NCBI GenBank assembly: GCA_977020255.1 | Contig: CDROCS010002834.1 | Span: forward strand, 434,001 to 498,000 | Reading direction: 5' to 3' | Length of the DNA: 64,000 bases | Source: Obrimoposthia wandeli | Lineage: Eukaryota | Part shown: positions 39,130 to 53,648 of the stretch, piece after piece | Position numbering within the stretch: position 1 is the first letter of the stretch | Layout of the letters: each line of letters begins with the position of its first letter | Notes under the pieces: generated by a model | Seen by the model: only the letters and a program-made list of their open reading frames with translations | What the model was told of the DNA's origin: nothing | Database searches by the model: none | Position numbers and translations under genes: made by a program

Positions 39130-40173
39130 ATGAATAAATTCACCTTAGCGACTCTTGTTGCACTCGTTCCTCTTTATACTCACGCCGCAAATTTCAATAC
39201 CATCTCAAGCTTCGGTGACAGTCTGTCCGATATCGGCAACAAACATATGATCACCGTCGAGATGAGCAATAAAACTTCAGGAAAAATTGGCATTCGTGCC
39301 TCAGAACCTAATTTCAACGGCCACTTCAGCAATGGGCCAGTCTGGACCGAATATCTGGCCAGTTTTCTTGCAATGCCAGCGCCAACCCGCGCTCATGGCA
39401 AAATCGAGAGCAAAGTAATTCTTAAAAACCAAGACGACAAACTTGTAGCCTACCACTATAAAGATAAAGCCCTGTTAGGTACGAACTGGGCAGTCGGCGG
39501 TGCGATGTCTGGTCTGGGCAATTTTATCGATATTGATGCCACCAACGGCTTCACCGCCTCTTCAGGTCTTGATGTTCTGGCAAACAGCGGCCAGCAAATT
39601 AAACAACGCATTGCCAACAAAGGCCAGTTCAGTGGCAGCGAGCTGGTCAGCTATATGAGTGGGACCAACAATCTGTGGTTCACTCTGTTCGGCGATCTCA
39701 ATCAAACCGGTGACAAAGCGGCATCCTATGCCCTTGCGGACGTGAAAGCCTTAATTGATGCTGGCTCAAAACAGATCTTAGCCGCAAACATTCCAAATTT
39801 TGTTGATGCACCATGGTTTGCAGGCAAACAGGACAAAACGACCCCGTTTATCCAGTCACACAACCAAGCGTTAAAAACAGGGTTAAAAAAACTGGCAGCA
39901 ACTCATCCTGATATCGACATTTTCTATTTTGATACTTTTGCCGTGTTTAATAAGGTTATTGATAATGTGAACAATCATGGTCAGTACCGTGATGTCGATC
40001 TGGGTGTCACCATCACCAACGTGACCGATGAAGCATATAGCTATGCTACTGGGGCAGTTATCGCCCAGCCAAACCATAACCTATTCTGGGATGGACTTCA
40101 TCCGACAACTGCAATGCACAAAATTATCGCTAAGCATGCCGCAGACCTCATCGAAACCGGACTGCCATTATGA
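39130..40173 (+). CDS. Secreted SGNH/GDSL esterase
   Basis: Signal peptide [19 protein letters not shown]. Block I FGDSLSD, FSNGPVW, block II WAVGGA, block III SGTNN, block V FWDGLHPT. Confidence 0.9.
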
Positions 40174-42272
40174 TCTCACTTAAATCCATACGCCATCAAA
40201 TCATCATCGGCGCAGCAAGCTGCCTTTTAATCTCGCTCGTCGCGGTATTGCTTGTCGGCCTAAAATACTCCAACCAGCTTGAAGGGATGGTGTACAACAA
40301 AACGCATGCCTTTGCCGAGCAAGAACAAACCCAACGGCTGGAAGATACCAGTAAATACCGTTCAGAGCAGATCCAAAACCAGTTATCTGTAGCGATGAAT
40401 TCTGTTGAAGCTCTGGCCAGTGTGATATCTGGAATGGCAAATAACGATGACGGCCAAACCAAACTCAGCCGTGAAGACCTTTCACTGGTGGTACGCGATC
40501 TGCTGGCGGGCAACCAGAAGTTTCTAGGGGCCTATATCGCTTTCGAACCCAATGCTTGGGATGGAAAAGATGCGCTTTACGAAGCTATCGACGGCAAAGG
40601 CCAGTTCAACGTGTATTGGACCCGCGGTAGCGACAACCAACTGAAGCCCTCATCGGTCGATTCCGATCGATTTTATATCCAAGATAAAACCAAAATAGGG
40701 ACCCGTGTCAGTGAATGGTACCTCTGTCCGATTGAGACTGGCCGCAGCTGCCTGATCGACCCGTGGGCATACAATGTTCAGGGCAAACAGGTGTTAATGG
40801 CCAACCTTGTCACCCCGATTAAAGCCAATGGCCGCACCATCGGCATGATAGGTATCGATTTATCGGTAAACTTTATCAATGAGTTGGCACTAAGGCTAAA
40901 ACAAAATCAATTTGGTCAAAACTCCCACGTCAGCATTATCACCTACCGCGGTGTTGTTGCAGGTGATACCGATCCGAGCTCTCCACTTGGTGACGTATTG
41001 TCAGACTGGAACCAGCGCAAATCTCAATTTCAAGCCGGCAAGCAGTTGTGGAACTCTACTGATGAATTCTCCAGCCTGGTGACCCCCATTAAGGTAGGCA
41101 ACACCAACACCCCATGGATGTTATGGATTGCGATTCCTAAAGCCGATCTGCTAGAAGACATCAATGCCTTACAAAAAGAGTTAAAGACGTCGTTCGGTGA
41201 TTTCCTTAACGCCCAATTAATAGCGGGCCTGTTAATTTCTGTCTTAGCACTCGCCATGCTCTACATATTGGCTAAACGTATTTCCACCCCAATTCAGCAA
41301 GTGGTGAACATTGTTCAACAGCTCGGCCGAGCCGGTGGCGATCTGACCTCCCGCTTGGATGTAACGAGAAAAGATGAAACTGGCGCTCTGATGAACGGCC
41401 TTAACATTCTGATGGCCTCGTTGCAGAGTATGATCCGCGATATCGCTGGTTCAGTCGACCATTTAAAACTGTCGGCAAATCGTTCTGCCAGTATTGCTGA
41501 AGCATCGCATCAAGATGTACAACAGCAACGTCAAGAACTGGAACAAGTTGCCACCGCCATTAATGAAATGGCCTCTGCGGCAAGCGAAGTGGCCAGCAAT
41601 GTGGCTAACACAGCCAACTCGGTGGAAGAGGTAAATCAGTCCATTACGCGTTGCGGTGATGTGGTCAATGACAGCGCCAGTATAATCAACAAGTTAGGCG
41701 AAGAAATGGAGCGTTCCTCTTCGACAATTATTGAACTAGAAACTCAGAGCCACCAGATCAGCAGTATTCTTGAGGTGATCCGTAGCATTTCAGATCAAAC
41801 CAACTTACTGGCCTTAAATGCTGCGATTGAAGCGGCACGGGCGGGTGAGCATGGTCGTGGATTTGCGGTTGTCGCTGACGAAGTCCGTCAGTTAGCATCC
41901 AAAACCCAAAACTCCACTGAAGAAATTCAGCAGATGATCAACCAGTTCCAAAATCAAATTAAGCTGACAGTAGAGACTATTGCAACTGGCAGAACCTTTA
42001 CACATAACAGTATAGAAAGCAGCAAAACGGCAGTCTTGGAGTTAGAGTCGGTAGTCGCTGCCACAGCAACCATTCAAGAAATGATGTGCCAAATAGCCAC
42101 AGCTTCAGAAGAGCAACATCAGGTGACTGAAGATATTAATCGCAATATCAATGCGATTACCGATATCACCATCAAAGCCGCCCAAGGGGCAGAGACATCA
42201 AACCAAGAAGCTCAAGGGATGTTGAAGCAAACCAGTGAGGTTGAAGATAAGCTAAATAAATTTAAATATTAG
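40170..42272 (+). CDS. Methyl-accepting chemotaxis protein with a periplasmic dCache domain
   Basis: TM1, ~310-aa periplasmic domain (FNVYWTR, EWYLCP, CLIDP, GIDLSV), TM2, [39 protein letters not shown] overlap with the esterase stop. Confidence 0.95.
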
Positions 42273-42409: not shown

Positions 42410-42880
42410 ATGAAAACCAATTTAATTACCCGTGAAGGTTATGATAAACTCAAAAAAGAGCTCGATTTCCTTTGGCGAGAAGAACGTCCTGAGATAACCA
42501 AAAAAGTGACGTGGGCTGCAAGCCTAGGTGATCGCAGTGAAAATGCTGACTATCAATACAATAAAAAACGCCTGCGTGAAATCGACCGCCGAGTACGTTA
42601 TTTACGCAAGCGTCTTGAGATTGTCAAAGTGGTCGATTACTCCCCCCAGCAAGATGGCAAAGTCTTTTTTGGCGCATTTGTTGTCATTGAAAATGAAGAA
42701 GCCGAACAAAAAGCATTCCGCATCGTGGGTCCAGATGAAATCTATGGCAGAAATGACTACATTTCGATTGATTCCCCAATGGCACGTGCGTTATTAAAGA
42801 AAGAAGTCGATGAAGAATTTGAAGTGGTGACACCTCAGGGCAAAAAGCTGTGGTTTATAAATACGATTCGCTACGCGTAA
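42410..42880 (+). CDS. greB: Transcription elongation factor GreB
   Basis: ITREGY..L..EL..LWREERPEIT..V.WAASLGDRSENADYQYNKKRLREIDRRVRYL, ISIDSPMARALL. Confidence 0.97.
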   Translation: MKTNLITREGYDKLKKELDFLWREERPEITKKVTWAASLGDRSENADYQYNKKRLREIDRRVRYLRKRLEIVKVVDYSPQQDGKVFFGAFVVIENEEAEQKAFRIVGPDEIYGRNDYISIDSPMARALLKKEVDEEFEVVTPQGKKLWFINTIRYA

Positions 42881-42967: not shown

Positions 42968-43870
42968 TCACATTCCTTCACCCTTTAGCTCTTGCTGACA
43001 CATTAGCTCTTGCTGGCATAAGATAAAAAAAGCATGTGCTTGTGGTGAAATATGGCGATCTAACAATCGAAAAATACCAATTTCCCGCTCAACGACAGGG
43101 TCTATCAATGGGATCCACACCAACTCTTTTTCATTGGTCGGAAAAGCCAATTTAGGCAAGGTGGTTATACCTATACCCAATTCTAATACTGAAAATAGCG
43201 AGGTAATATTTTCAACCGAATACAAAGCACTTTCTGCCAATACCCGCGCAGGTGTCGGTGCCAATAATGTGCAGGTACCATTTTTTATAAAGGGATAGGC
43301 TTCAAGCTGCTGCCACTTCAGTCCATTTTTAAATGTGGCTAACGGATGATCGGATAAACACACTACGCCTAATGGATCTGAAATTAAGGGCGTGAAATCA
43401 ATACGACTATCATTAATATGCAAGCAATTCCCCAGCGCAAGATCAACCTCACCAGCGAGCAGCCGTAACTCAACACCAGCCGCATTATCATCAATTAATG
43501 ACACTTCAACTTGCGGGTGACACGCCGTAAAAGCCGCCAACACTTTCGGGATTAGCTTGGCTGCAACGGAAGGCACACTACCAATACGCACTTGCCCTAA
43601 CTGCCCTGCTGCGGCGGCACTCAGATCACACGTTAAACTCTGATAATGATTTAAGAACTGCCGAATTTTAGGTAAACATATTGCGCCAAACGGAGTGAGT
43701 TTTACTTTATGCCCCGTTTCAAACAATGTTTGCCCCAGAATTTTCTCGAGTTCTTTCACTGCCGTCGATAAAGCAGCTTGAGAGCGGTTGGCCTTGCTGG
43801 AGGCTGCACGAAACCCGCCTTCATCCACCACCAGTACAAAATATTTTAACTGCTGCAGCTTAATATCCAT
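42968..43870 (-). CDS. LysR family transcriptional regulator (CynR/AlsR-like), divergent from the catabolic operon
   Basis: N-terminal HTH FRAASSKANRSQAALSTAVKELE, LTPFG, LLAGEVDLAL. Confidence 0.93.
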   Translation of the reverse strand: MDIKLQQLKYFVLVVDEGGFRAASSKANRSQAALSTAVKELEKILGQTLFETGHKVKLTPFGAICLPKIRQFLNHYQSLTCDLSAAAAGQLGQVRIGSVPSVAAKLIPKVLAAFTACHPQVEVSLIDDNAAGVELRLLAGEVDLALGNCLHINDSRIDFTPLISDPLGVVCLSDHPLATFKNGLKWQQLEAYPFIKNGTCTLLAPTPARVLAESALYSVENITSLFSVLELGIGITTLPKLAFPTNEKELVWIPLIDPVVEREIGIFRLLDRHISPQAHAFFILCQQELMCQQELKGEGM

Positions 43871-43929
43871 GTCTTAACGCATCCTTTTTTCACCCGTTTG
43901 TGAGCAACCGAGCATCAACCCTTTCCCTA

Positions 43930-43950
43930 TTGATAAATAAAACTTATCAA
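43930..43950. promoter_or_regulatory. LysR recognition site (T-N11-A)
   Basis: Perfect inverted repeat TTGATAA-N7-TTATCAA containing T-N11-A in the divergent LysR/RidA intergenic region. Confidence 0.72.
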
Positions 43951-44038
43951 TTGTCAAAAATAAAGCGTTAGATTTATCACTATTCTTTGCGCATAATTTA
44001 ACCACACCGAAACATACTCGCAACATAACGGATTAACT

Positions 44039-44431
44039 ATGTCAGCCCAAGCCGCTAAAAAACCAGTAAAAACAGAGCTTTTCGCATCTAAAGCACCCTT
44101 AGAGTGGGCTGTCGTGAATAACGGTACATTGTATACAGCACAAATCCCAATTGATCAGCAAGGTATGGTTGTTGAAGGGGGTATTGAAGCACAAACACGC
44201 CAAACCATGAATAACTTGATTCATACCCTTGAATGCGCAGGCGTTTCTACCGATGCGGTATTACAAGTGCTGATCTATGTTACCGACCGCAGCTATCTTG
44301 CAACCGTCAATCAAGTTTACGCAGAATACTTCAACGCCCCTTTCCCTAACCGTGCAGCCGTTGTTGTAGCAGGTTTAGCGCGTGAAGAAATGCTGGTTGA
44401 GCTTGTGGTTTACGCTGCCGTCGAATCATAA
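44039..44431 (+). CDS. RidA/YjgF/YER057c family imine deaminase
   Basis: LYTAQIP, IEAQTRQTMNNL, VNQVYAEYF...PNRA (conserved Arg), MLVEL. Confidence 0.9.
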   Translation: MSAQAAKKPVKTELFASKAPLEWAVVNNGTLYTAQIPIDQQGMVVEGGIEAQTRQTMNNLIHTLECAGVSTDAVLQVLIYVTDRSYLATVNQVYAEYFNAPFPNRAAVVVAGLAREEMLVELVVYAAVES

Positions 44432-44473
44432 AAATAACCCTAATTAGATTACGTCACATAACAAGGATTTCTC

Positions 44474-45922
44474 ATGACATTTGAAGCAGAAAAAGCCCTC
44501 TACATTGCTGGTGAATGGCAATCAGGTATCTCTACTGTAGCTAACATCAACCCTTCAGATATCTCTCAGCAATTAGGCAATTTTGCACAAGCAAGCCAAC
44601 AGCAAGTGCAACAGGCAATTGATGCGGCTAAAACAGCGCAACCTGAATGGGAAAAAACCCCGTTAGAACACAAGCAAAAAGTACTGCAAGCAATCGGTGA
44701 TGAGCTTATTACCCGTTGTGATGAACTAGGCACATTGCTCTCAAGCGAAGAAGGCAAACCGTTTGCCGAAGGCCGGGGTGAAATCTACCGTGCAGGTCAA
44801 TTCTTCCAATACTACGCGGCTGAAGTATTGCGCCAAATGGGTGACCTAGCCCAATCGACTCGCCCAGGGGTATCGGTAGAAGTGAGCCGCGAAGCCGTCG
44901 GCGTTGTCGCGATTATCTCTCCTTGGAATTTCCCCACCGCAACAGCGGCATGGAAAATTGCCCCTGCATTGGCCTTTGGTAACAGTGTTATCTGGAAACC
45001 TGCCAACCTTACCCCAGCAAGTGCCGTGGCATTAACTGAAATCATTCATCGCCAAGGTTTACCTGCCGGTACATTCAACTTGGTACTCGGTAGCGGTTCT
45101 GAAGTGGGTAATACCCTGATTAATTCAGACCAAATCAATGCCGTTAGCTTCACAGGTTCAGTCGATACAGGTCGAAAAATCGCAACCGCAACAGCCCCTA
45201 ATTTTGTTCGTTGTCAATTAGAGATGGGCAGTAAAAATGCCTTAGTCATCGCTGATGATGCCGATATTCACATTGCCGTTGAAGCCACCATTATGGGGTC
45301 ATTCTCGGGTGCAGGTCAGAAATGTACCGCTTCTTCGCGCTTAGTCGTACTCGATAGCATTCACGATGCGTACGTTGATGCCTTAATCAAACGCATGAGC
45401 ACATTAAAGATTGGTCACGCGCTGCAAGATGGCGTGTTCATGGGGCCGGTTGTGGATGATAAACAACTCGCATCAAACATGTCGTGGATAGATAAAGCCC
45501 GTGGGCATGGCGCTGAGCTAGCCTTTGGTGGCGAGCAACTTAACCTAGAACACGAAGGTTACTACATGTCGCCGACCTTGTTCTTGAACACGAAAAACAG
45601 TTGGGATGTAAACCAAGAAGAAGTCTTCGCTCCGATGGCGAGTGTCATTCGCGTCAACGATCTTGAGGAAGCAATCGCCACCGTCAACGATACGCGCTTT
45701 GGTTTAACGAGCGGCATCATCACGCAAAGCCTACGCTCCAGCGCATTGTTCAAGCAACAAGCACAAACAGGCTGTGTCATGGTTAACCTACCAACAGCAG
45801 GTACCGATTATCACGTGCCATTTGGTGGCCGTAAACAATCAAGCTTTGGTCCCCGTGAACAAGGTCAGTACGCGAAAGAGTTCTACACCATTGTAAAAAC
45901 CGCTTACCAGCGCCCTTACTAA
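44474..45922 (+). CDS. NAD(P)+ aldehyde dehydrogenase (2-oxoglutarate semialdehyde dehydrogenase-like)
   Basis: ISPWNFP, WKPA, FTGS, LEMGSKN (catalytic Glu), GQKCTAS (catalytic Cys), EEVFAP, PFGGRK.SSFG.REQG. Confidence 0.9.
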   Translation: MTFEAEKALYIAGEWQSGISTVANINPSDISQQLGNFAQASQQQVQQAIDAAKTAQPEWEKTPLEHKQKVLQAIGDELITRCDELGTLLSSEEGKPFAEGRGEIYRAGQFFQYYAAEVLRQMGDLAQSTRPGVSVEVSREAVGVVAIISPWNFPTATAAWKIAPALAFGNSVIWKPANLTPASAVALTEIIHRQGLPAGTFNLVLGSGSEVGNTLINSDQINAVSFTGSVDTGRKIATATAPNFVRCQLEMGSKNALVIADDADIHIAVEATIMGSFSGAGQKCTASSRLVVLDSIHDAYVDALIKRMSTLKIGHALQDGVFMGPVVDDKQLASNMSWIDKARGHGAELAFGGEQLNLEHEGYYMSPTLFLNTKNSWDVNQEEVFAPMASVIRVNDLEEAIATVNDTRFGLTSGIITQSLRSSALFKQQAQTGCVMVNLPTAGTDYHVPFGGRKQSSFGPREQGQYAKEFYTIVKTAYQRPY

Positions 45923-45931
45923 GGAACGTCT

Positions 45932-46921
45932 ATGTATCAGGATCGTATCATTATTGATGGTTTGCAGTATTGCAATTGGGATCGCACGTATTTTGAAACA
46001 CTGAAAGCGAGCGGCATTACCGCTGTTCATGCCACGGTGGTTTATCACGAAACAGCCCGCGAAACCTTAACGCGCTTTGCACAATGGAACCTTCGCTTTG
46101 AGCACAACAGTGATCTCATTATGCCGATTATGAGCATGGACGATGTCACCACAGCCAAAGCAACTGGGCGAGTCGGTATTTTCCTTGGTGCACAAAATTG
46201 CTCACCCATTGATGATGAGATCGGTCTGATCAGTGTGATGCGCCAACAAGGGTTGCTGATCATGCAACTGACTTATAACAACCAGAGTCTATTAGCGACT
46301 GGGTGTTATGAGCAAGAAGATGCTGGTGTGACGCGTTTTGGTAAACAAGCCATTGCCGAGATGAATCGGGTGGGAATGATTGTGGATATGTCTCACAGTG
46401 CTGAGCGTTCAACGCTAGAAGCTATCGACATTTCTTCTCGCCCGATTTGTATCAGCCATGCAAACCCGAATTTCGCGCACCCCGCGTTACGGAATAAATC
46501 GAATGAAGTCATTCAATCATTAGCCAATCGCGGCGGTTTGATTGGATTCAGTTTGTATCCGTTCCACTTGCCCAATAGCAGCCAATGTACCTTAGAAACA
46601 TTTTGCCAAATGGTCGCCGATAGCGCCGAATTAATTGGCGTAGATCACCTCGCTATCGGCAGTGATTTATGCCTGAACCAACCACAAGAAGTGCTGGAGT
46701 GGATGCGAAATGGGCGTTGGTCGAAAGCGATGGATTATGGTGAGGGTTCATCAAGTAATTCAGGCTGGCCAGATGCACTACCGTGGTTTTGTGACAGCAA
46801 GGGAATGGAAAACATTTACCACGGCTTGATAAGGCAAGGTTTCAGCGAAACTGAAAGCAGCCAAGTAATGGGAGGAAACTGGTTCAACTTCTTACAGGAA
46901 GGCTTAACACCTGTCAGCTAA
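45932..46921 (+). CDS. Membrane-dipeptidase (M19)-like amidohydrolase with an altered metal site
   Basis: QLTYN.Q, GVTRFGK.AIAEMNRVGMIVDMSH, SHAN, RNKS, IGSD, MGGNW. The N-terminal HxD is replaced by LQY. Confidence 0.85.
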   Translation: MYQDRIIIDGLQYCNWDRTYFETLKASGITAVHATVVYHETARETLTRFAQWNLRFEHNSDLIMPIMSMDDVTTAKATGRVGIFLGAQNCSPIDDEIGLISVMRQQGLLIMQLTYNNQSLLATGCYEQEDAGVTRFGKQAIAEMNRVGMIVDMSHSAERSTLEAIDISSRPICISHANPNFAHPALRNKSNEVIQSLANRGGLIGFSLYPFHLPNSSQCTLETFCQMVADSAELIGVDHLAIGSDLCLNQPQEVLEWMRNGRWSKAMDYGEGSSSNSGWPDALPWFCDSKGMENIYHGLIRQGFSETESSQVMGGNWFNFLQEGLTPVS

Positions 46922-47018
46922 ACTCAATCATGGTCTGCGCATAATAATGACCTTAAGCAGACCTATACCCAATATTTCGTCCAAGCAATACCAATAACGA
47001 CGCCTGGAGATACGCACG

Positions 47019-48581
47019 ATGTCCGACTTTACCAATGCAGTAAAAGCAGAACATATTCCAACACCACAATCGACGGCTGAAAAGCTTGGGCTTGATAATC
47101 CTGCCTTATGGATGAGCGGTGGCTTTATTGCCCTTTTTGTCATATTTGCATTGTACGACAATGCCTTACTCTCAGACGTGGTCAATACAGGCTTTTCTTG
47201 GTCGGTGAAAATCTTTGGTCCTTATTGGCAGGTATTGTTATTACTTACTTTTTTGATCAGCCTCGTTTTAGCCGTAGGCCATACAGGACACGTTCGCTTA
47301 GGCGCGCTTGATAAGCCTGAAATAGATGGTTTCCGTTGGATGGCGATCATTCTATGTACCCTACTAGCAGGAGGCGGGGTATTTTGGGCTGCCGCCGAGC
47401 CTATCGCTCACTATATGAGTCCGCCCCCATTGTTCGGGGCCCAAGAAAGCCCTCAACAAAATGCAATTAATGCCTTATCACAATCATTTATGCACTGGGG
47501 CTTCCTCGCATGGGCCATTCTTGGCAGCTTAACCTCAATTGTATTAATGCATCTGCACTACGATAAAGGATTACCACTGCAGCCGCGTACTTTGCTCTAC
47601 CCCATTCTAGGTAAACGCGCATTAACAGGTTTAACCGGTGCAACGATTGATGCTTGTTGCATTATTGCTGTCGCCGCGGGAACAATCGGCCCAATCGGAT
47701 TTCTAGGGTTACAAATCAGCTTTGCATTAAATGCGCTATTTGATATTCCTGACGGCTTTACCACCCAATTTATCGTGATCCTTTGTGCGATTGCGATTTA
47801 TACCTTATCAGCCTTAAGCGGTCTAAATCGCGGGATTCAAATTCTGAGTCGCTATAACATCATTTTAGCGGTTGGTTTAATGGCCTACATCATGATTTTT
47901 GGCCCCACAAGTTTCATTGTAAATAGCTACATTCAAGGTGTCGGCAGCATGATCGACAACTTCATTCCAATGGCAACCTACCGCGGTGATGAAGGTTGGC
48001 TAAGCTGGTGGACAGTATTCTTCTGGGGCTGGTTCATCGGTTATGGCCCTATGATGGCGATCTTTATTGCCCGTATTTCGCGTGGTCGTACTATCCGTGA
48101 ATTAGTGATGGCGGTGAGTGTCATCGCGCCGATTATTACTTGCTTCTGGTTTACTGTTGTCGGCGGTTCGGGCGTTGCCTTTGAAATGGCCGATCCGGGT
48201 TCTGTCAGTAAAGCTTTCGAAGGTTTCAACCTACCTGCCGCACTACTTGCTATTACTCAACAGCTGCCGTTTCCATTAATTGTCTCGATTCTGTTTCTTA
48301 TCCTAACAACGATCTTCATTGTCACAACAGGAGACTCAATGACCTACACCATCAGTGTGGTGATCAGTGGCGACACCGAACCGAATGCTGCTATTCGCAT
48401 ATTTTGGGGAGTAATGATGGGAGTAACAGCAATAATCCTAATCTCCTTAGGCTCAGGTGGCGTCTCGGCATTGCAGTCCTTTATCGTCATCACTGCTGTC
48501 CCCGTTTCTCTTATCTTGTTGCCATCGCTGTGGAATGCCCCAAAAATGGCCAGAATAATGGCAAAGGAACAAGGTTTATAA
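47019..48581 (+). CDS. BCCT (betaine/carnitine/choline) family transporter
   Basis: 12 TMs, AAAEP, FMHWGFLAW, GIQILS..N, WWTVFFWGWFIGYGP, ARISRGRTIRE. Confidence 0.93.
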   Translation: MSDFTNAVKAEHIPTPQSTAEKLGLDNPALWMSGGFIALFVIFALYDNALLSDVVNTGFSWSVKIFGPYWQVLLLLTFLISLVLAVGHTGHVRLGALDKPEIDGFRWMAIILCTLLAGGGVFWAAAEPIAHYMSPPPLFGAQESPQQNAINALSQSFMHWGFLAWAILGSLTSIVLMHLHYDKGLPLQPRTLLYPILGKRALTGLTGATIDACCIIAVAAGTIGPIGFLGLQISFALNALFDIPDGFTTQFIVILCAIAIYTLSALSGLNRGIQILSRYNIILAVGLMAYIMIFGPTSFIVNSYIQGVGSMIDNFIPMATYRGDEGWLSWWTVFFWGWFIGYGPMMAIFIARISRGRTIRELVMAVSVIAPIITCFWFTVVGGSGVAFEMADPGSVSKAFEGFNLPAALLAITQQLPFPLIVSILFLILTTIFIVTTGDSMTYTISVVISGDTEPNAAIRIFWGVMMGVTAIILISLGSGGVSALQSFIVITAVPVSLILLPSLWNAPKMARIMAKEQGL

Positions 48582-48664
48582 CGCACAACTTATCTACTTA
48601 GGTCGGGCAGTGAACCTTGCTGTCTTTATCAATAATGAGTGACTGAAACTCAAAGAATAGAATC

Positions 48665-50377
48665 ATGGTGAGCAATATGGATGCACATCCTTGTACTGGA
48701 ACCCAATCACAATTACGCCACCCCGATACGGTAATGGCGCCAGAGCGATTGGGCGCAATGCATCAAAGTCGTATCAGTTTTGTACGTAGCTTGATCCGTC
48801 GTATGGCTAATCAGAAATGGTCCGTATCTCAAGTTCAATGGGATATTTCCGAACAAGGGTTTGGGATTGCGGTATACCGCTTAGATACCCCCAACCATCA
48901 TTACCATTTGGTGATCTTTTCTGATGCTATTGCCGATGAAGAACGTAACGATCGCGTGATCGCTGAAAAGTGGGATGTAACGTTTGCACTGGTACAAGGT
49001 GATATTGATAAAGCATTTTTAAGCCAATTACAAAACAATGTGCCACTCCAAGAAGCTGGCCGTAACTCAAGCCAAGTATTGGTGTTGGCTCGCGCCAATA
49101 AAAGTGTGCGGGTCTTTGATCACTTAGTCACTTCACTAGCAAAAGGACAACAACCTGATTCGCAAGTCTTAGCCGATGTCGGTTATATTCTTCGCACGAC
49201 AGCGGTTTATGGTAACGGTAAATTTGGCATTGCAGATTTTGAGATTTTAGATGAGAACCCAGACTTCAACCTCTCTTTCAGCGCTCAAATGTGCGCAGTC
49301 TATATGTTGCGCCAATTCAGTCTTGATTGGGTGCACTTCTTGGCCAAACAGCAAGGGGGCGCTAAAGCAATCCATCTTGCTCGTCCATTACAGCGTTATT
49401 TAGGCGTTGGTAATGCAACAGGACTCGGCATGGCACCCTACCTCATTCGTCATCCGCGTATTGTCGATCAATGGTTATCGGAACGTGAAAAAGCCCTTGC
49501 AGCAGTATCAGCCTGCACCATCACACCTGCTGCCAATCAGGCTATTTGCCCGTTATTGCACCGTGCCATTGCGCACCTAACGCAAGTTGTCACCATTAAC
49601 GAACACCAACAAAAATTGAACGCTGAAGCGATCAGTGACCTTCACAACATAATGGCTAACATCACTGCTGCTCAACAAAAACAGTGGCCATGGAAACAGC
49701 TCATTAAAGACAACCAGCAATACTGTAACGAAGCCCAAGAAATAACTATTTCGTGCATCATGGAGCTGTATCCAGAATTAGTTGATAGTCACGAAAACAA
49801 CATGAATGCTGATGAAACACAGGCATTAACACCCGGCATCACGGTTCAACACCTAACGGATGTATTGAAAGAACGCTACCGCTGGGCGCTAGATATCGAC
49901 TTTGCTTCTGCCGAAAACAGCTATTGGTTTTGGTACCGCTCTGAAGACAAAGAAGAACCAAGAATGGGAATTCGTGGTCAAGAACCCGGTGAAGATCGCG
50001 AGTTAGCCCTCGATATTGCACGCCAGATTTATCGTTTACATGCTGCATTGGCAGCCGTTGAACCGTCACAAACCTTGGCTGAGTTTCTATTACATCAGCC
50101 ACAATATCGCTCTATTGCGCGTCGCGCATGGACACTGGGGCATTGCCATATGGGTGATATTCAAATGAATATCTTAGACCAACATGCCTTGCCGATGCAC
50201 CTATTACGTTGCAAGTTAGCCATGTTCGGTGCCACAAAGTTTGACCCACGTTCAGACCGCTGGGTGCGAGTCACCTTCTTCCAAGGCGCTCCTTTAACGG
50301 ACGAAATTCACGACCAAGAGTGGTTATTCCCATTATTACCGACTAACACTGAATCAACATCGGAGGCGCAAACATGA
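48665..50377 (+). CDS. Conserved hypothetical 570-aa soluble protein, probable enzyme of the operon
   Basis: Long intact ORF with enzyme-like motifs (RANKSVR, LRTTAVYGNGKFG, GVGNATGLGMAPYL, FDPRSDRW). ATGA-coupled to the next gene. No family recognised. Confidence 0.85.
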   Translation: MVSNMDAHPCTGTQSQLRHPDTVMAPERLGAMHQSRISFVRSLIRRMANQKWSVSQVQWDISEQGFGIAVYRLDTPNHHYHLVIFSDAIADEERNDRVIAEKWDVTFALVQGDIDKAFLSQLQNNVPLQEAGRNSSQVLVLARANKSVRVFDHLVTSLAKGQQPDSQVLADVGYILRTTAVYGNGKFGIADFEILDENPDFNLSFSAQMCAVYMLRQFSLDWVHFLAKQQGGAKAIHLARPLQRYLGVGNATGLGMAPYLIRHPRIVDQWLSEREKALAAVSACTITPAANQAICPLLHRAIAHLTQVVTINEHQQKLNAEAISDLHNIMANITAAQQKQWPWKQLIKDNQQYCNEAQEITISCIMELYPELVDSHENNMNADETQALTPGITVQHLTDVLKERYRWALDIDFASAENSYWFWYRSEDKEEPRMGIRGQEPGEDRELALDIARQIYRLHAALAAVEPSQTLAEFLLHQPQYRSIARRAWTLGHCHMGDIQMNILDQHALPMHLLRCKLAMFGATKFDPRSDRWVRVTFFQGAPLTDEIHDQEWLFPLLPTNTESTSEAQT

Positions 50378-51108
50378 TGCAGGTATCACACAACGAATTG
50401 GTCGTACTCAGTGCCAAAGCCTTCGATGGATTACGCCGACATTGCGGTGAATCAGACATGATTGCCAATATGGTGGCTGATTTAGAAATGGCCGGATTAA
50501 ATGGGGTTCAACATTTTGTGAATGCCCTCGCCTTCATGAAAAATGAAAACGATGGCCCTGTACAAGTCGATGCATTTACAGGCTCGCAGCTAACGGCGAA
50601 TCTACACGGTTGCAGTATTTTATGCCACTTACCCACCTTGCTGGATTACACCGTTGAAAAGCTGGTCGACCAACCCACAATTACCCTACACATTGAGCAA
50701 TGCCATAACCGCTGGCTAGCCTTTGGTGAACTGGTCAAACTGGCGGGTAAAGGCTTATCGGTAAAAGCACAGTGGTATAACGGCAGTGATCCTAAGCATG
50801 TGGTGTATGTATTGAATGCGGGGTGCATCTTGCCCGATATTTACCTTTCAAAAGCAGACCCAACAATGAATAAGCACTCTTTGACGATAGAAATCAGCAA
50901 AACGCCTATTCCACAACCTCGACTAACAGCACACCATCAGCATATTTCATCTGCCACCCTCGCCGCGGCGAAACGACATGCTTGGCAACATGGTGTGACG
51001 GTGAATAAATCTGACTGGCTCAAGATCAAGCAAACGGCAGAAGGTATTTTAGTTGAATCCAGTGATGCTTCACGTTTGGGCGCTGGCGAATCTCAGCCCT
51101 GCGAATAA
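50374..51108 (+). CDS. DUF3726-like protein, probably a degenerate Ldh_2/DpkA-type fold
   Basis: N-terminus VSHNEL...KAF.G...A.MVA.LE..G and C-terminus AW.HGV.V...DW..I resemble the ends of Ldh_2 oxidoreductases (recognised by eye). Confidence 0.6.
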   Translation: MMQVSHNELVVLSAKAFDGLRRHCGESDMIANMVADLEMAGLNGVQHFVNALAFMKNENDGPVQVDAFTGSQLTANLHGCSILCHLPTLLDYTVEKLVDQPTITLHIEQCHNRWLAFGELVKLAGKGLSVKAQWYNGSDPKHVVYVLNAGCILPDIYLSKADPTMNKHSLTIEISKTPIPQPRLTAHHQHISSATLAAAKRHAWQHGVTVNKSDWLKIKQTAEGILVESSDASRLGAGESQPCE

Positions 51109-51293
51109 CGCCACTGTACTGTCGATGTAAAGACCTAACGAATACAAAACAAGCCAACAAATTTAACCGTTTACTGGTTTTTTATTACCTAGAATTCGGG
51201 CACTGACACACTCTTAACATGCCATACCTTGTCACCACCTGAATCCTCCGTAGAATACGGTGCATAGTTTAGGCAACCAAGAGATACCAACGG

Positions 51294-53648
51294 ATGAGCA
51301 ACTCTATCAATCAGATGATTGCCAGCGAACTGAATGTTCGCCTTGAGCAAGTTACAGCCGCAGTCACTCTGTTAGATGACGGTAATACGGTTCCTTTTAT
51401 TTCGCGTTACCGTAAAGAAGTCACCAACGGGCTGGATGATACTCAACTACGTAATCTGGAATCCCGCCTAGGGTACTTGCGTGAAATGGATGATCGCCGC
51501 AAGACCATCCTTAAAGCAATCACCGAGCAAGGAAAACTAACCCCACAATTGGAAGCTGAAATTCATTCGGCTGACAGCAAAACACGCTTAGAAGATCTGT
51601 ACCTGCCTTATAAACAAAAGCGTCGAACCAAAGGACAGATAGCGATAGAAGCAGGCTTAGAACCGCTTGCCGATACATTGTGGCAGCAACCGGCTAATGA
51701 TCCTGACGCGACAGCAACCCAATATATCAATGCAGACAAAAACATTGCTGATACCAAAGCAGCACTCGACGGCGCACGCGCTATCTTAATGGAACGTTTT
51801 GCCGAAGATGCCGCACTGCTACATAAGATCCGCCGTCAGCTTCAAACCAATGCCGAGTTCACCTCGTGCATGGTCGCTGGCAAAGAACAAGAAGGCGCGA
51901 AGTTTAAAGATTATTTCGAGCATAACGAACAACTTAAAAATGTACCCTCACACCGCGCACTCGCCATGTTCCGCGGTCGTAATGAAGGCTTCCTACAACT
52001 GTCTTTAAACGCAGATCCGAATCAAGAGGAAGGCGTACGAGGTTCATACTGTGAAGTCATTATTGCTGATCATTATGGCGTCAAACTCGGTACCCAACCT
52101 GCCGATGCATGGCGTAAGCAAGTTATTAGCTGGGCATGGCGCATTAAAATATTGATGCACATGGAAACCGAACTAATGAGTGCATTGCGTGAAAAAGCCG
52201 AAGACGGTGCTATACAGGTATTTGCCGACAACCTGAGTGATTTGTTGATGGCAGCACCAGCAGGTCCGCGTACCACATTGGCACTCGACCCTGGTTTACG
52301 CACTGGCTGTAAAGTTGCGGTGATTGATACCACGGGTAAGTTGGTCGATATCGCGACTATTTATCCGCATCAACCACAGCGTCAAGTTGCACAATCTGAA
52401 GCGGCGGTTTTAGCGTTATTAAACAAACACCAAGTCAACTTAATTGCTATCGGTAACGGAACTGCTTCACGTGAAACAGATGCCTTTGTTGCCAAACTCT
52501 TAAAAGACAACAACCTCAAAATTCAAAGTGTGATGGTCAGCGAAGCAGGCGCGTCGGTTTATTCGGCCTCTGAACTTGCCGCCAATGAATTTCCTGATCT
52601 GGATGTGACGATTCGTGGTGCAGTATCAATTGGTCGCCGTCTGCAAGATCCGTTGGCAGAACTGGTAAAAATTGATCCCAAGGCCATCGGTGTTGGTCAA
52701 TATCAGCACGATGTAAGCCAAAGCATGTTGGCTAAGCGTCTTGATGTTGTCGTGGAAGATTGTGTAAACGGCGTGGGCGTTGATGTAAATACGGCATCAG
52801 CAGCCCTACTCACACGCGTGGCAGGTTTAACCAAAACCATGGCACAGAATGTGGTGGATTATCGTGATGAGCATGGCCGTTTCGAAAGCCGCACCACCTT
52901 AAAGAAAGTCGCCCGTTTAGGGCCAAAAGCCTTTGAGCAGTGTGCCGGTTTCTTACGAATCATGAACGGTAAAAACCCACTCGATAGCTCGGCGGTTCAC
53001 CCTGAATCGTATTCAGTTGTAAAAGCCATTGCCGCGAATAACAGTAAAGCCATGGATGCCATCATTGGTAACACTGAATTTTTACGCAGCCTAAATGCGG
53101 CTGACTATGCCGACGAAAAGTTTGGCCTACCAACCGTTACCGATATTATCAGCGAGCTTGATAAACCCGGTCGCGATCCGCGGCCTGAATTCAAAACCGC
53201 TACATTTGCTGAAGGTGTTAACGAAGTAAAAGATCTAATACCCGGCATGATTTTAGAAGGTGTTATCACCAACGTGACTAACTTTGGTGCCTTCGTTGAT
53301 GTTGGTGTTCACCAAGATGGTTTGGTACATATTTCAGCGCTATCAGATAAATTCATCTCTGACCCACGTGAAGTCGTTAAAGCTGGTGATGTGGTAAAAG
53401 TCAAAGTGATGGAAGTGGACTTACAACGTAAACGTATTGCCATGTCTATGCGCATGAGCGACGAACCGGGACAAGAAAAACCCGCTCGTAAGCCACAGCA
53501 AAACCAAGCACGCAGCACTGCAAACCATAATGCACAGAGTAATAACCGCAGTAGCAGTAATACTCCAAAGAGTAACCAAGGAAATAACTCAGCAGGCGGA
53601 GCGATGGGTGGCGCGTTTGCCGCGGCATTTGCCAAAGCGAAGAAATAA
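51294..53648 (+). CDS. yhgF: Tex/YhgF RNA-binding transcription accessory protein
   Basis: [56 protein letters not shown], HhH, and an S1 domain ([18 protein letters not shown]). Confidence 0.96.

What the first reader, a model, noticed from the sequence alone, without database searches (positions are those of the whole stretch)
42968..51108. Uncharacterised LysR-controlled catabolic operon for a BCCT-imported osmolyte, lacking any known demethylase or lyase
Seen: a divergent LysR with a perfect operator, then RidA, a semialdehyde-type ALDH, an atypical amidohydrolase, an atypical BCCT, a 570-aa unknown protein and a DUF3726-like protein, all co-oriented and inserted between greB and tex. Established: BCCTs import quaternary-amine or sulfonium zwitterions. 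Known catabolic routes use Rieske demethylases (GbcAB, HpbBC, CntAB), flavin oxidases, CoA transferases (DddD, Cai) or glycyl-radical lyases (CutC), and none of these is encoded here. Inference: a new route in which the 570-aa protein performs the committing step, the amidohydrolase opens an amide or ring, RidA hydrolyses an imine/enamine, and the ALDH oxidises a semialdehyde to a central acid. Candidate substrates include proline/hydroxyproline/pipecolate betaines, ectoine-like compounds, other algal or invertebrate osmolytes, or DMSP analogues. This is the strongest candidate for an undescribed system in this window.
Basis: partly seen in the sequence, partly recalled or inferred. Interest (0 to 1): 0.82.

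Follow-up and report, generated by a model that had tools for sequence, protein, structure and literature searches.

The report
Homarine catabolic operon (homR-EDCTBA)
This seven-gene cluster is real and well conserved, but it is the homarine-degrading "hom" operon published in March 2026, so it is a known system whose first enzyme pair (HomA/HomB) still has no understood mechanism.

Summary
A divergent LysR gene is followed by genes for a RidA-like protein, an aldehyde dehydrogenase, an M19-type amidohydrolase, a BCCT transporter, a 570-aa protein with no Pfam family, and a DUF3726 protein. All lie at the stated coordinates between greB and tex, with a perfect 8+8 inverted repeat in the divergent promoter region.

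The claim that the system is undescribed does not hold. Gene content and order match the homABCDER/homT homarine (N-methylpicolinate) operon of Ferrer-Gonzalez, Heal et al., Nat Microbiol 2026 (PMC13236597).
- All seven window proteins align full length (29-70% identity) to the seven-gene locus of Cobetia marina. The paper gives 98.5% ANI between that species and its model strain OBi1.
- The cluster recurs in 54 (core homABCD) to 45 (all seven genes) of 63 species loci with enough flanking sequence.

Findings added here:
- HomB has no detectable fold relative.
- HomA is a shortened Ldh_2-fold protein, not a recognisable flavin protein, and is often fused to HomB.
- HomE keeps the RidA catalytic arginine.
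- A GATAA-N9-TTATC box is conserved across genera.

The window comes from a close relative of Photobacterium profundum. I rate it already known, with low to moderate interest. The scan had noted the 570-aa gene before (s1-241205), on this same stretch.

The parts
42968..43870 (-). homR, a LysR-type regulator transcribed divergently from the operon
   Evidence: Pfam HTH_1 and LysR_substrate. It is 42% identical over its full length to the LysR gene of the Cobetia marina hom locus. A strong LysR homolog is present in 50 of 63 well-flanked loci.
43929..43951 (.). Predicted HomR operator, ATTGATAA-N7-TTATCAAT (core GATAA-N9-TTATC, T-N11-A type)
   Evidence: Sequence and inverted repeat. The same core recurs in the homR-operon intergenic region of Photobacterium, Vibrio, Shewanella, Psychromonas, Amphritea and Pseudomonas, and as GATAG-N9-CTATC in Psychrobacter. 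Binding itself is inferred.
44039..44431 (+). homE, a RidA-family protein (auxiliary gene)
   Evidence: Pfam Ribonuc_L-PSP. TIGR00004 scores 77 bits against a cut-off of 106. The motif PNR aligns with the PAR of solved RidA-family proteins, so the arginine is kept. It is 70% identical to the Cobetia marina RidA gene at the end of the hom locus.
44474..45922 (+). homD, an aldehyde dehydrogenase
   Evidence: Pfam Aldedh, 502 bits. It is nearest to alpha-ketoglutaric semialdehyde and 2,5-dioxovalerate dehydrogenases. It is 64% identical to the Cobetia marina gene. In the paper homD is needed for growth on homarine in both Cobetia and R. pomeroyi.
45932..46921 (+). homC, an M19-type amidohydrolase lacking the usual N-terminal metal motif
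   Evidence: Pfam Peptidase_M19, 232 bits, profile positions 35-319. The closest solved structure is 2I5G, an 'amidohydrolase' of unassigned function, at E 7e-57. It is 61% identical to the Cobetia marina gene.
47019..48581 (+). homT, a BCCT transporter and probable homarine importer
   Evidence: Pfam BCCT, 521 bits. It is 48% identical to the BCCT gene in the middle of the Cobetia marina locus. In the paper, deleting homT slows growth on homarine.
48665..50377 (+). homB, a 570-aa protein of unknown fold and the specific marker of the pathway
   Evidence: There is no match to Pfam, NCBIfam or PDB sequences and no fold match. The family has 1287 clusters at 50% identity. It is 47% identical to the Cobetia marina protein and 94% identical to the P. 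profundum protein.
50374..51108 (+). homA, a DUF3726 protein with a shortened Ldh_2 fold, partner of HomB
   Evidence: Pfam DUF3726. A profile of HomA sequences hits YiaK at E 6e-6 and sulfolactate dehydrogenase at 1.7e-4. The model has pLDDT 91 and gives 27 Foldseek hits, all in the Ldh_2 family. HomA is fused to HomB in at least 38 of the 150 listed family representatives.
42410..42880 (+). greB, left flank (context only)
   Evidence: NCBIfam GreB equivalog, 255 bits.
51294..53648 (+). tex, right flank (context only)
   Evidence: Pfam Tex domains.

Best explanation
This is the homarine (N-methylpicolinate) catabolic operon in the Vibrionaceae arrangement: homR, then divergently homE-homD-homC-homT-homB-homA.

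Shown in the paper for orthologs:
- The operon is induced by homarine.
- homB, homC, homD and homR are required for growth on homarine.
- homT speeds uptake.
- The ring is opened with the N-methyl group intact and one carbon is lost.
- N-methylglutamate is produced and then converted to glutamate.

Inferred here:
- HomT imports homarine.
- HomR, bound at the GATAA-N9-TTATC box, activates the operon when homarine or an intermediate is present.
- The HomA-HomB complex carries out the committing ring-opening step and leaves an N-formyl, N-methyl, unsaturated C5 semialdehyde.
- HomD oxidises the aldehyde, and HomC removes the formyl carbon. Either order fits the reported C7H9NO5, C6H9NO3 and C6H9NO4 masses.
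- The resulting 2-(methylamino)-ene / 2-(methylimino)glutarate is either reduced to N-methylglutamate or hydrolysed by HomE to 2-oxoglutarate plus methylamine.
For: - Paper: PMC13236597 describes a regulator, a betaine-type transporter and five catabolic genes. These are a short HomA adjacent to HomB, a HomC peptidase, a HomD aldehyde dehydrogenase and a variable HomE.
- Cobetia comparison: the Cobetia marina locus L084 has LysR divergent from ALDH, M19, BCCT, the HomB-family protein, DUF3726 and RidA. This fits the published tag order ACFLL8_11490 (homE), 11505 (transporter), 11515 (homD). All seven window proteins align full length to it at 29-70% identity.
- Operon criterion: the paper requires homA, B, C and D within 10 kb. 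Here they span 6.6 kb.
- Conservation: core ABCD is present in 54 of 63 well-flanked species loci and all seven genes in 45.
- Vibrionales: the paper reports that a Vibrio isolate carrying the operon grows on homarine, and assigns in situ homB transcripts to Vibrionales.
- HomA-HomB complex: it is supported by the 4-nt gene overlap and by frequent fusion of the two proteins.
- HomE: it keeps the RidA arginine.
- HomD: it resembles 2-oxoglutarate semialdehyde dehydrogenases.
Against: - I did not see the sequences of strain OBi1 or of R. pomeroyi SPO3188-3192. The link rests on Cobetia marina as a proxy, and the ACFLL8 tags did not appear in the cluster listings.
- HomB is only 47% and HomA only 29% identical to the Cobetia proteins, so a shifted substrate range cannot be excluded.
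- No experiment exists for this organism.
- Every enzyme step is inferred. No Hom protein has been assayed in vitro, and the C6/C7 masses have other possible structures. C6H9NO3 could, for example, be N-methylpyroglutamate.
Confidence: 0.88

Rival explanations
1. The cluster belongs to the hom family, but the Vibrionaceae clade acts on a different N-heterocyclic or N-methylated zwitterion. Candidates include trigonelline, another pyridinium carboxylate, or a cyclic imino-acid betaine.
For: HomB, HomT and HomA are only 47%, 48% and 29% identical to the Cobetia proteins. The gene order differs from that of Cobetia. The BCCT reaches no equivalog cut-off.
Against: The paper reports that a Vibrio isolate with the operon grows on homarine, and attributes environmental homB transcripts that track homarine to Vibrionales. 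No second HomB paralog group with a different gene context appeared among 80 loci.
Confidence: 0.07
2. This is a rival for the mechanism only. As the paper proposes, HomA and HomB form a TgnAB-like two-component flavin system, with HomA as the FAD-binding flavin supplier and HomB as the oxygenase.
For: The paper reports FAD-binding motifs in HomA and a confident AlphaFold heterodimer. The reported masses require incorporation of oxygen atoms.
Against: - HomA matches only DUF3726/Ldh_2 by sequence.
- All 27 significant fold matches of HomA are Ldh_2-family NAD(P)-dependent dehydrogenases.
- No flavin domain is found by Pfam.
- HomB has no match to any solved flavin monooxygenase. The best Foldseek E-value is 0.025 and the best VIA Z-score is 5.3.
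Confidence: 0.15
3. The cluster is a truly undescribed pathway unrelated to any published one.
For: All database names for HomB are 'hypothetical protein'. No library model covers it.
Against: The published hom operon has the same seven-gene composition and the same order in Cobetia.
Confidence: 0.03

Closest known systems
homABCDER/homT homarine catabolic operon (Cobetia sp. OBi1, Ruegeria pomeroyi DSS-3; PMC13236597)
   Same: The same seven protein families are present. homA and homB are adjacent, and homC and homD are nearby. There is a divergent LysR gene, a BCCT gene inside the operon as in Cobetia, and a RidA-type homE as in 93% of gammaproteobacterial examples.
   Different: The gene order is R|E-D-C-T-B-A, against R|D-C-T-B-A-E in Cobetia. 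Identity to Cobetia marina is 29-70%. The operon sits between greB and tex, which is seen only in the P. profundum group.
Trigonelline pathway TgnAB-C-D-E-F of Acinetobacter baylyi (as cited in the paper and from my own recollection)
   Same: The overall chemical logic is shared. An N-methylpyridinium carboxylate is opened with the N-methyl group kept. An amidohydrolase then removes a formyl group, and an aldehyde dehydrogenase follows.
   Different: No sequence or fold relation between HomA/HomB and flavin reductase or oxygenase pairs was found. The end product is N-methylglutamate rather than succinate plus methylamine.
Ldh_2 family (PF02615: YiaK, ComC, AllD, DpkA)
   Same: The HomA model superposes on these enzymes with TM-scores up to 0.69 normalised to the query. 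The HomA profile aligns with the N-terminal 136 residues and the C-terminal helix of YiaK.
   Different: HomA has 244 residues against about 335. The histidine of the YiaK 'sHG' motif is asparagine here and is not conserved in the family. HomA works with, or is fused to, HomB.
PDB 2I5G, an 'amidohydrolase' in the M19-like subgroup
   Same: It aligns with HomC over its full length at E 7e-57 and has the same IDGL N-terminus.
   Different: The structure has no function in its entry title, and I did not establish whether it comes from a hom operon.

Membership tests
hom operon (PMC13236597) | homA and homB adjacent | tested here: met
   The 570-aa gene ends at 50377 and the DUF3726 gene starts at 50374, a 4-nt overlap. 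The same pairing is seen in 57 of 63 loci.
hom operon (PMC13236597) | Orthologs of homA, B, C and D co-located within 10 kb (the paper's survey criterion) | tested here: met
   The four genes lie within 44474-51108, a span of 6.6 kb.
hom operon (PMC13236597) | Sequence orthology to the experimentally studied Cobetia operon | tested here: met
   All seven proteins align full length to the Cobetia marina locus L084 at 42, 70, 64, 61, 48, 47 and 29% identity. This is a proxy: the paper states that OBi1 has 98.5% ANI to C. marina, and the sequences of OBi1 itself were not seen.
hom operon (PMC13236597) | Orthology to R. pomeroyi SPO3188-3192, the genes with Tn mutants | not tested
   No Rhodobacterales locus was among the 80 returned. 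The link rests on the paper's own reciprocal best hits.
hom operon (PMC13236597) | Induction by homarine and growth on homarine | not testable with these tools
   The only data are fragments 95-99% identical in marine-sediment metatranscriptome assemblies. These show presence in RNA libraries, not induction.
hom operon (PMC13236597) | Downstream mgdABCD (N-methylglutamate dehydrogenase) in the genome | not testable with these tools
   It is not in the region examined. An unchecked scan note (s1-250314) reports a sarcosine-oxidase/MGD-like cluster elsewhere in this genome.
Ldh_2 dehydrogenases (PF02615), for HomA | Ldh_2 fold | tested here: met
   There are 27 Foldseek hits with E below 1e-3, all in the Ldh_2 family. 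The profile hits YiaK at E 6e-6.
Ldh_2 dehydrogenases (PF02615), for HomA | Full-length domain of about 335 aa, and the histidine of the HG motif | tested here: not met
   HomA has 244 aa. Only profile positions 1-136 and the C-terminal helix align. The window has NG where YiaK has HG, and the position is not conserved in alignment A4. That this histidine is catalytic is my recollection.
TgnAB-type two-component flavin oxygenase | A flavin reductase partner and a flavin-dependent oxygenase fold | tested here: not met
   There is no flavin domain in HomA or HomB. HomB has no significant fold match in PDB or AFDB Swiss-Prot.
RidA (TIGR00004), for HomE | Conserved active-site arginine and a family score above the cut-off | tested here: inconclusive
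   The arginine is present: PNR aligns with PAR. The TIGR00004 score is 77 bits against a cut-off of 106, so HomE is a Rid-family member but not the archetypal RidA.
Peptidase_M19, for HomC | A Pfam match above the gathering score and the N-terminal HxD metal ligands | tested here: inconclusive
   The score is 232 bits against a cut-off of 26. The match starts at profile position 35, and the N-terminus reads IDGLQ, as in PDB 2I5G. The canonical HxD motif is recalled, not tested.

The most novel reading that the evidence does not exclude
HomA-HomB is a new kind of pyridinium ring-opening enzyme that does not follow the flavin two-component scheme.
- HomB would be a catalytic protein with a new fold.
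- HomA would be a cut-down Ldh_2 (imine-reductase lineage) subunit. It would dock the 2-carboxy-iminium end of homarine, or reduce 2-(methylimino)glutarate to N-methylglutamate.
- HomE would give gammaproteobacteria a branch to 2-oxoglutarate plus methylamine that does not depend on mgd. This would explain why the paper's Vibrio isolate grows on homarine without mgdABCD.
Probability: 0.25. Interest if true: 0.6.

Novelty: already known. Interest (0 to 1): 0.27.

Why it matters
Homarine is one of the most abundant small nitrogen compounds in marine plankton and invertebrates, and the hom operon is the only known route for its breakdown. Recognising this locus lets seven genes, two of them currently 'hypothetical', be annotated in a deep-sea Photobacterium and its relatives.

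The open question is enzymological. HomB defines a large family (1287 clusters at 50% identity) with no known fold, cofactor or mechanism, and its partner is a degenerate Ldh_2 protein rather than a flavoprotein. Solving that reaction would add a new type of N-heteroaromatic ring cleavage.

Tried and rejected
- Fold and sequence searches for HomB found nothing above noise. PDB sequences gave no hit. Foldseek against PDB gave a best E of 0.025 at TM 0.09. AFDB Swiss-Prot gave a best E of 0.018. The VIA wide search gave a best Z of 5.3, to urate oxidase, which is below the background the tool states.
- The protein atlas returned only unnamed clusters.
- A literature search for 'DUF3726' found nothing.
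- The 58-sequence alignment A2 was too diverse for the locus scan, so I repeated it with alignment A3.
- The scan's 80 best loci did not include Ruegeria or Cobetia. I reached Cobetia through a Halomonadaceae query and a contig look-up.
- Cluster listings did not show the paper's ACFLL8 locus tags.
- The paper's supplementary tables are not held, so I could not check whether this genome is in its survey.
- The promoter and terminator scan gave no more sites than shuffled sequence.
- I left the third homolog search unused. It was unlikely to reach R. pomeroyi.
- Known osmolyte routes (Rieske demethylases, DddD/Cai, CutC) are rejected because no such domain is present.
Full report
**What is there**

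The region holds seven intact ORFs. Pfam and NCBIfam identify them as follows:

| Coordinates | Strand | Product |
|---|---|---|
| 42968-43870 | - | LysR regulator |
| 44039-44431 | + | RidA-like protein |
| 44474-45922 | + | Aldehyde dehydrogenase |
| 45932-46921 | + | Peptidase_M19-type amidohydrolase |
| 47019-48581 | + | BCCT transporter |
| 48665-50377 | + | 570-aa protein with no family |
| 50374-51108 | + | 244-aa DUF3726 protein |

- The aldehyde dehydrogenase is closest to alpha-ketoglutaric semialdehyde and 2,5-dioxovalerate dehydrogenases, but below their cut-offs.
- greB and tex flank the cluster.
- The divergent intergenic region carries ATTGATAA-N7-TTATCAAT at 43929-43951.
- No known demethylase, lyase or CoA-transferase domain is present.

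**Which organism**

The 570-aa protein is 94% identical to that of Photobacterium profundum ATCC BAA-1252 and 77% identical to that of P. proteolyticum. Only these two relatives have the cluster between greB and tex. The placement is therefore lineage-specific, consistent with the operon having been inserted there.

**The family of the 570-aa protein**

- It is large and always annotated 'hypothetical'. More than 5000 proteins match in the word-indexed search, and 1287 clusters at 50% identity match in the exhaustive search.
- Members occur in Vibrionaceae, Shewanella, Moritella, Psychrobacter, Halomonadaceae, Marinobacter, Pseudomonas, SAR116, Caballeronia, and a few Bacillota and Chloroflexota.
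- Many members of 750-960 aa carry a C-terminal DUF3726-like domain, so the two proteins work together.

**Conservation of the cluster**

I searched the ORFs of 80 species-representative loci with the seven window proteins. Among the 63 loci with enough flanking sequence:

| Gene | Loci with the gene (of 63) |
|---|---|
| M19 gene | 61 |
| DUF3726 gene | 57 |
| ALDH gene | 54 |
| BCCT gene | 52 |
| LysR gene | 50 |
| RidA gene | 45 |
| All seven | 45 |

Three main gene orders occur (an apostrophe marks a gene on the opposite strand):
- R'|E-D-C-T-B-A in Vibrionaceae, Shewanella, Psychromonas and Psychrobacter (23 loci).
- R'|D-C-T-B-A-E in Halomonadaceae, Marinobacter and some Pseudomonas (14 loci).
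- E'-T'-C'-D'|R-B-A in Amphritea, Marinobacterium and other Pseudomonas (8 loci).

Alphaproteobacterial loci mostly lack the transporter and the RidA gene.

**Identification**

A literature search found Ferrer-Gonzalez, Heal et al., Nat Microbiol 2026 (PMC13236597). In Cobetia sp. OBi1 the paper reports the following:
- Homarine induces a cluster of a regulator, a betaine-type transporter and five catabolic genes (ACFLL8_11490-11520).
- homD (11515) is essential for growth on homarine.
- homT (11505) speeds growth on homarine.

In R. pomeroyi, Tn mutants of homB, homC, homD and homR (SPO3189-3192) lose growth on homarine. The paper also states:
- HomA is short, sits next to HomB in 97.7% of genomes, and is predicted to form a heterodimer with it.
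- HomC is a peptidase-like protein and HomD is an aldehyde dehydrogenase.
- HomE is auxiliary, kept in 93% of Gammaproteobacteria and lost in 94% of Alphaproteobacteria.
- Isotope tracing shows ring opening with the N-methyl group retained, loss of one carbon, intermediates C7H9NO5, C6H9NO4 and C6H9NO3, then N-methylglutamate, and then glutamate through mgdABCD.

**Sequence link**

- Starting from a Halomonadaceae HomB, I reached the Cobetia cluster and fetched the Cobetia marina locus. Its order is LysR' | ALDH - M19 - BCCT - HomB family (599 aa) - DUF3726/Ldh_2 (262 aa) - RidA.
- Read in reverse, this is E-A-B-T-C-D-R. It fits the published tags: first gene homE, fourth gene the transporter, sixth gene homD.
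- All seven window proteins align full length to that locus: R 42%, E 70%, D 64%, C 61%, T 48%, B 47%, A 29%.
- The paper's own operon criterion (homA, B, C and D within 10 kb) is met.
- The paper also reports a Vibrio isolate with the operon that grows on homarine, and homB transcripts from Vibrionales that follow homarine in the sea.

I did not see the sequences of OBi1 or R. pomeroyi themselves. That is the main remaining gap.

**What I can add on mechanism**

(a) HomB
- It has no detectable relative among solved or Swiss-Prot structures. The model is of moderate quality (pLDDT 74, pTM 0.76).
- Across the family the conserved residues are many arginines, one histidine, no cysteine, and a glycine-rich loop LGxGNxTGLGMAP. 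This argues against Fe-S or 2-His-1-carboxylate chemistry and leaves the cofactor open.

(b) HomA
- It is a shortened Ldh_2-fold protein. The Cobetia protein reaches the PF02615 cut-off over positions 1-136.
- A HomA profile hits YiaK (E 6e-6) and sulfolactate dehydrogenase.
- The model (pLDDT 91) gives 27 significant Foldseek hits, all Ldh_2 enzymes, including delta1-piperideine-2-carboxylate reductase.
- The histidine of the YiaK 'sHG' motif is asparagine here and is not conserved.
- I found no flavin domain, so the paper's 'FAD-binding motif' and its TgnAB analogy are not supported by these tests, though they are not excluded either.

(c) HomE keeps the RidA arginine.

(d) HomC belongs to an M19 subgroup that lacks the N-terminal motif, and its closest structure is the unassigned PDB entry 2I5G.

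(e) The GATAA-N9-TTATC box recurs in the regulator-operon intergenic region in several genera. The search was scored against the window's own motif. Matches of 12-14 of 14 positions within 100-170 nt are still far above chance by my estimate.

**Proposed course of the reaction (inference)**

1. HomT imports homarine.
2. HomAB opens the ring between C5 and C6, taking up oxygen and reducing equivalents. This leaves C6 as an N-formyl group and C5 as an aldehyde.
3. HomD oxidises the aldehyde. N-formyl-N-methyl-dehydroglutamate has the formula C7H9NO5, which matches a reported mass.
4. HomC removes formate, giving C6H9NO4.
5. The enamine/imine is then either reduced to N-methylglutamate or hydrolysed by HomE to 2-oxoglutarate and methylamine. 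The only reductase-lineage protein in the operon is HomA, and as I recall the Ldh_2 family includes N-methyl-amino-acid dehydrogenase.

The HomE branch would explain the paper's Vibrio isolate that grows without mgdABCD. Other structures fit the same masses, for example N-methylpyroglutamate for C6H9NO3.

**Expression**

Marine-sediment metatranscriptome assemblies contain fragments 95-99% identical to homD, homC, homT, homB and homA. This shows that a close relative is present in RNA libraries. It does not prove transcription or co-induction.

**Verdict**

It is, however, the published hom operon, so the novelty claim fails.

What remains of interest is the unknown chemistry of HomA/HomB, the role of HomE, and the disagreement between the Ldh_2 nature of HomA and the flavin model in the literature.

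Noticed in passing
window 39130-42272: A GDSL/SGNH esterase (347 aa) overlaps by 4 nt a dCache/HAMP methyl-accepting chemotaxis protein (700 aa), just upstream of greB and the hom operon. A homolog of the chemoreceptor sits in the same place in P. proteolyticum. The paper reports that homarine induces chemotaxis genes in Cobetia. Any link is untested.
   Followed up: partly
P0121-P0124, P0139, P0144, P0199, P0221 and others (family representatives): At least 38 of the 150 listed representatives (50%-identity clusters) are HomB-HomA fusions of 750-960 aa. In the longest ones the HomA-like part is about 280 residues, with a bigger middle insert, so it is closer to a full Ldh_2 domain.
   Followed up: partly
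L068 (Brevibacillus reuszeri), L083 (Thermoactinomycetaceae MAG), L047/L060 (Chloroflexota MAGs), L026 (Poseidonibacter MAG): hom-like clusters occur outside the Pseudomonadota. The two Bacillota loci have the order B-C-D...T and no HomA detectable with the window protein.
   Followed up: no
PDB 2I5G versus window 45932-46921: A structural-genomics 'amidohydrolase' of unassigned function is a full-length relative of HomC (E 7e-57) and shares the unusual IDGL N-terminus. It could serve as a template for the deformylase step.
   Followed up: no
window 43929-43951 and the equivalent intergenic regions of L004-L028, L062-L082: A GATAA-N9-TTATC palindrome is conserved next to homR in several genera. 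Psychrobacter has GATAG-N9-CTATC instead.
   Followed up: partly
same genome, another piece (scan note s1-250314): An earlier unchecked note reports a heterotetrameric sarcosine-oxidase/MGD-like cluster elsewhere in this genome. It could be the N-methylglutamate dehydrogenase that completes the pathway.
   Followed up: no
window 45200-51150: Marine-sediment metatranscriptome assemblies (runs X1-X4) hold contigs 95-99% identical to parts of homD, homC, homT, homB and homA.
   Followed up: partly
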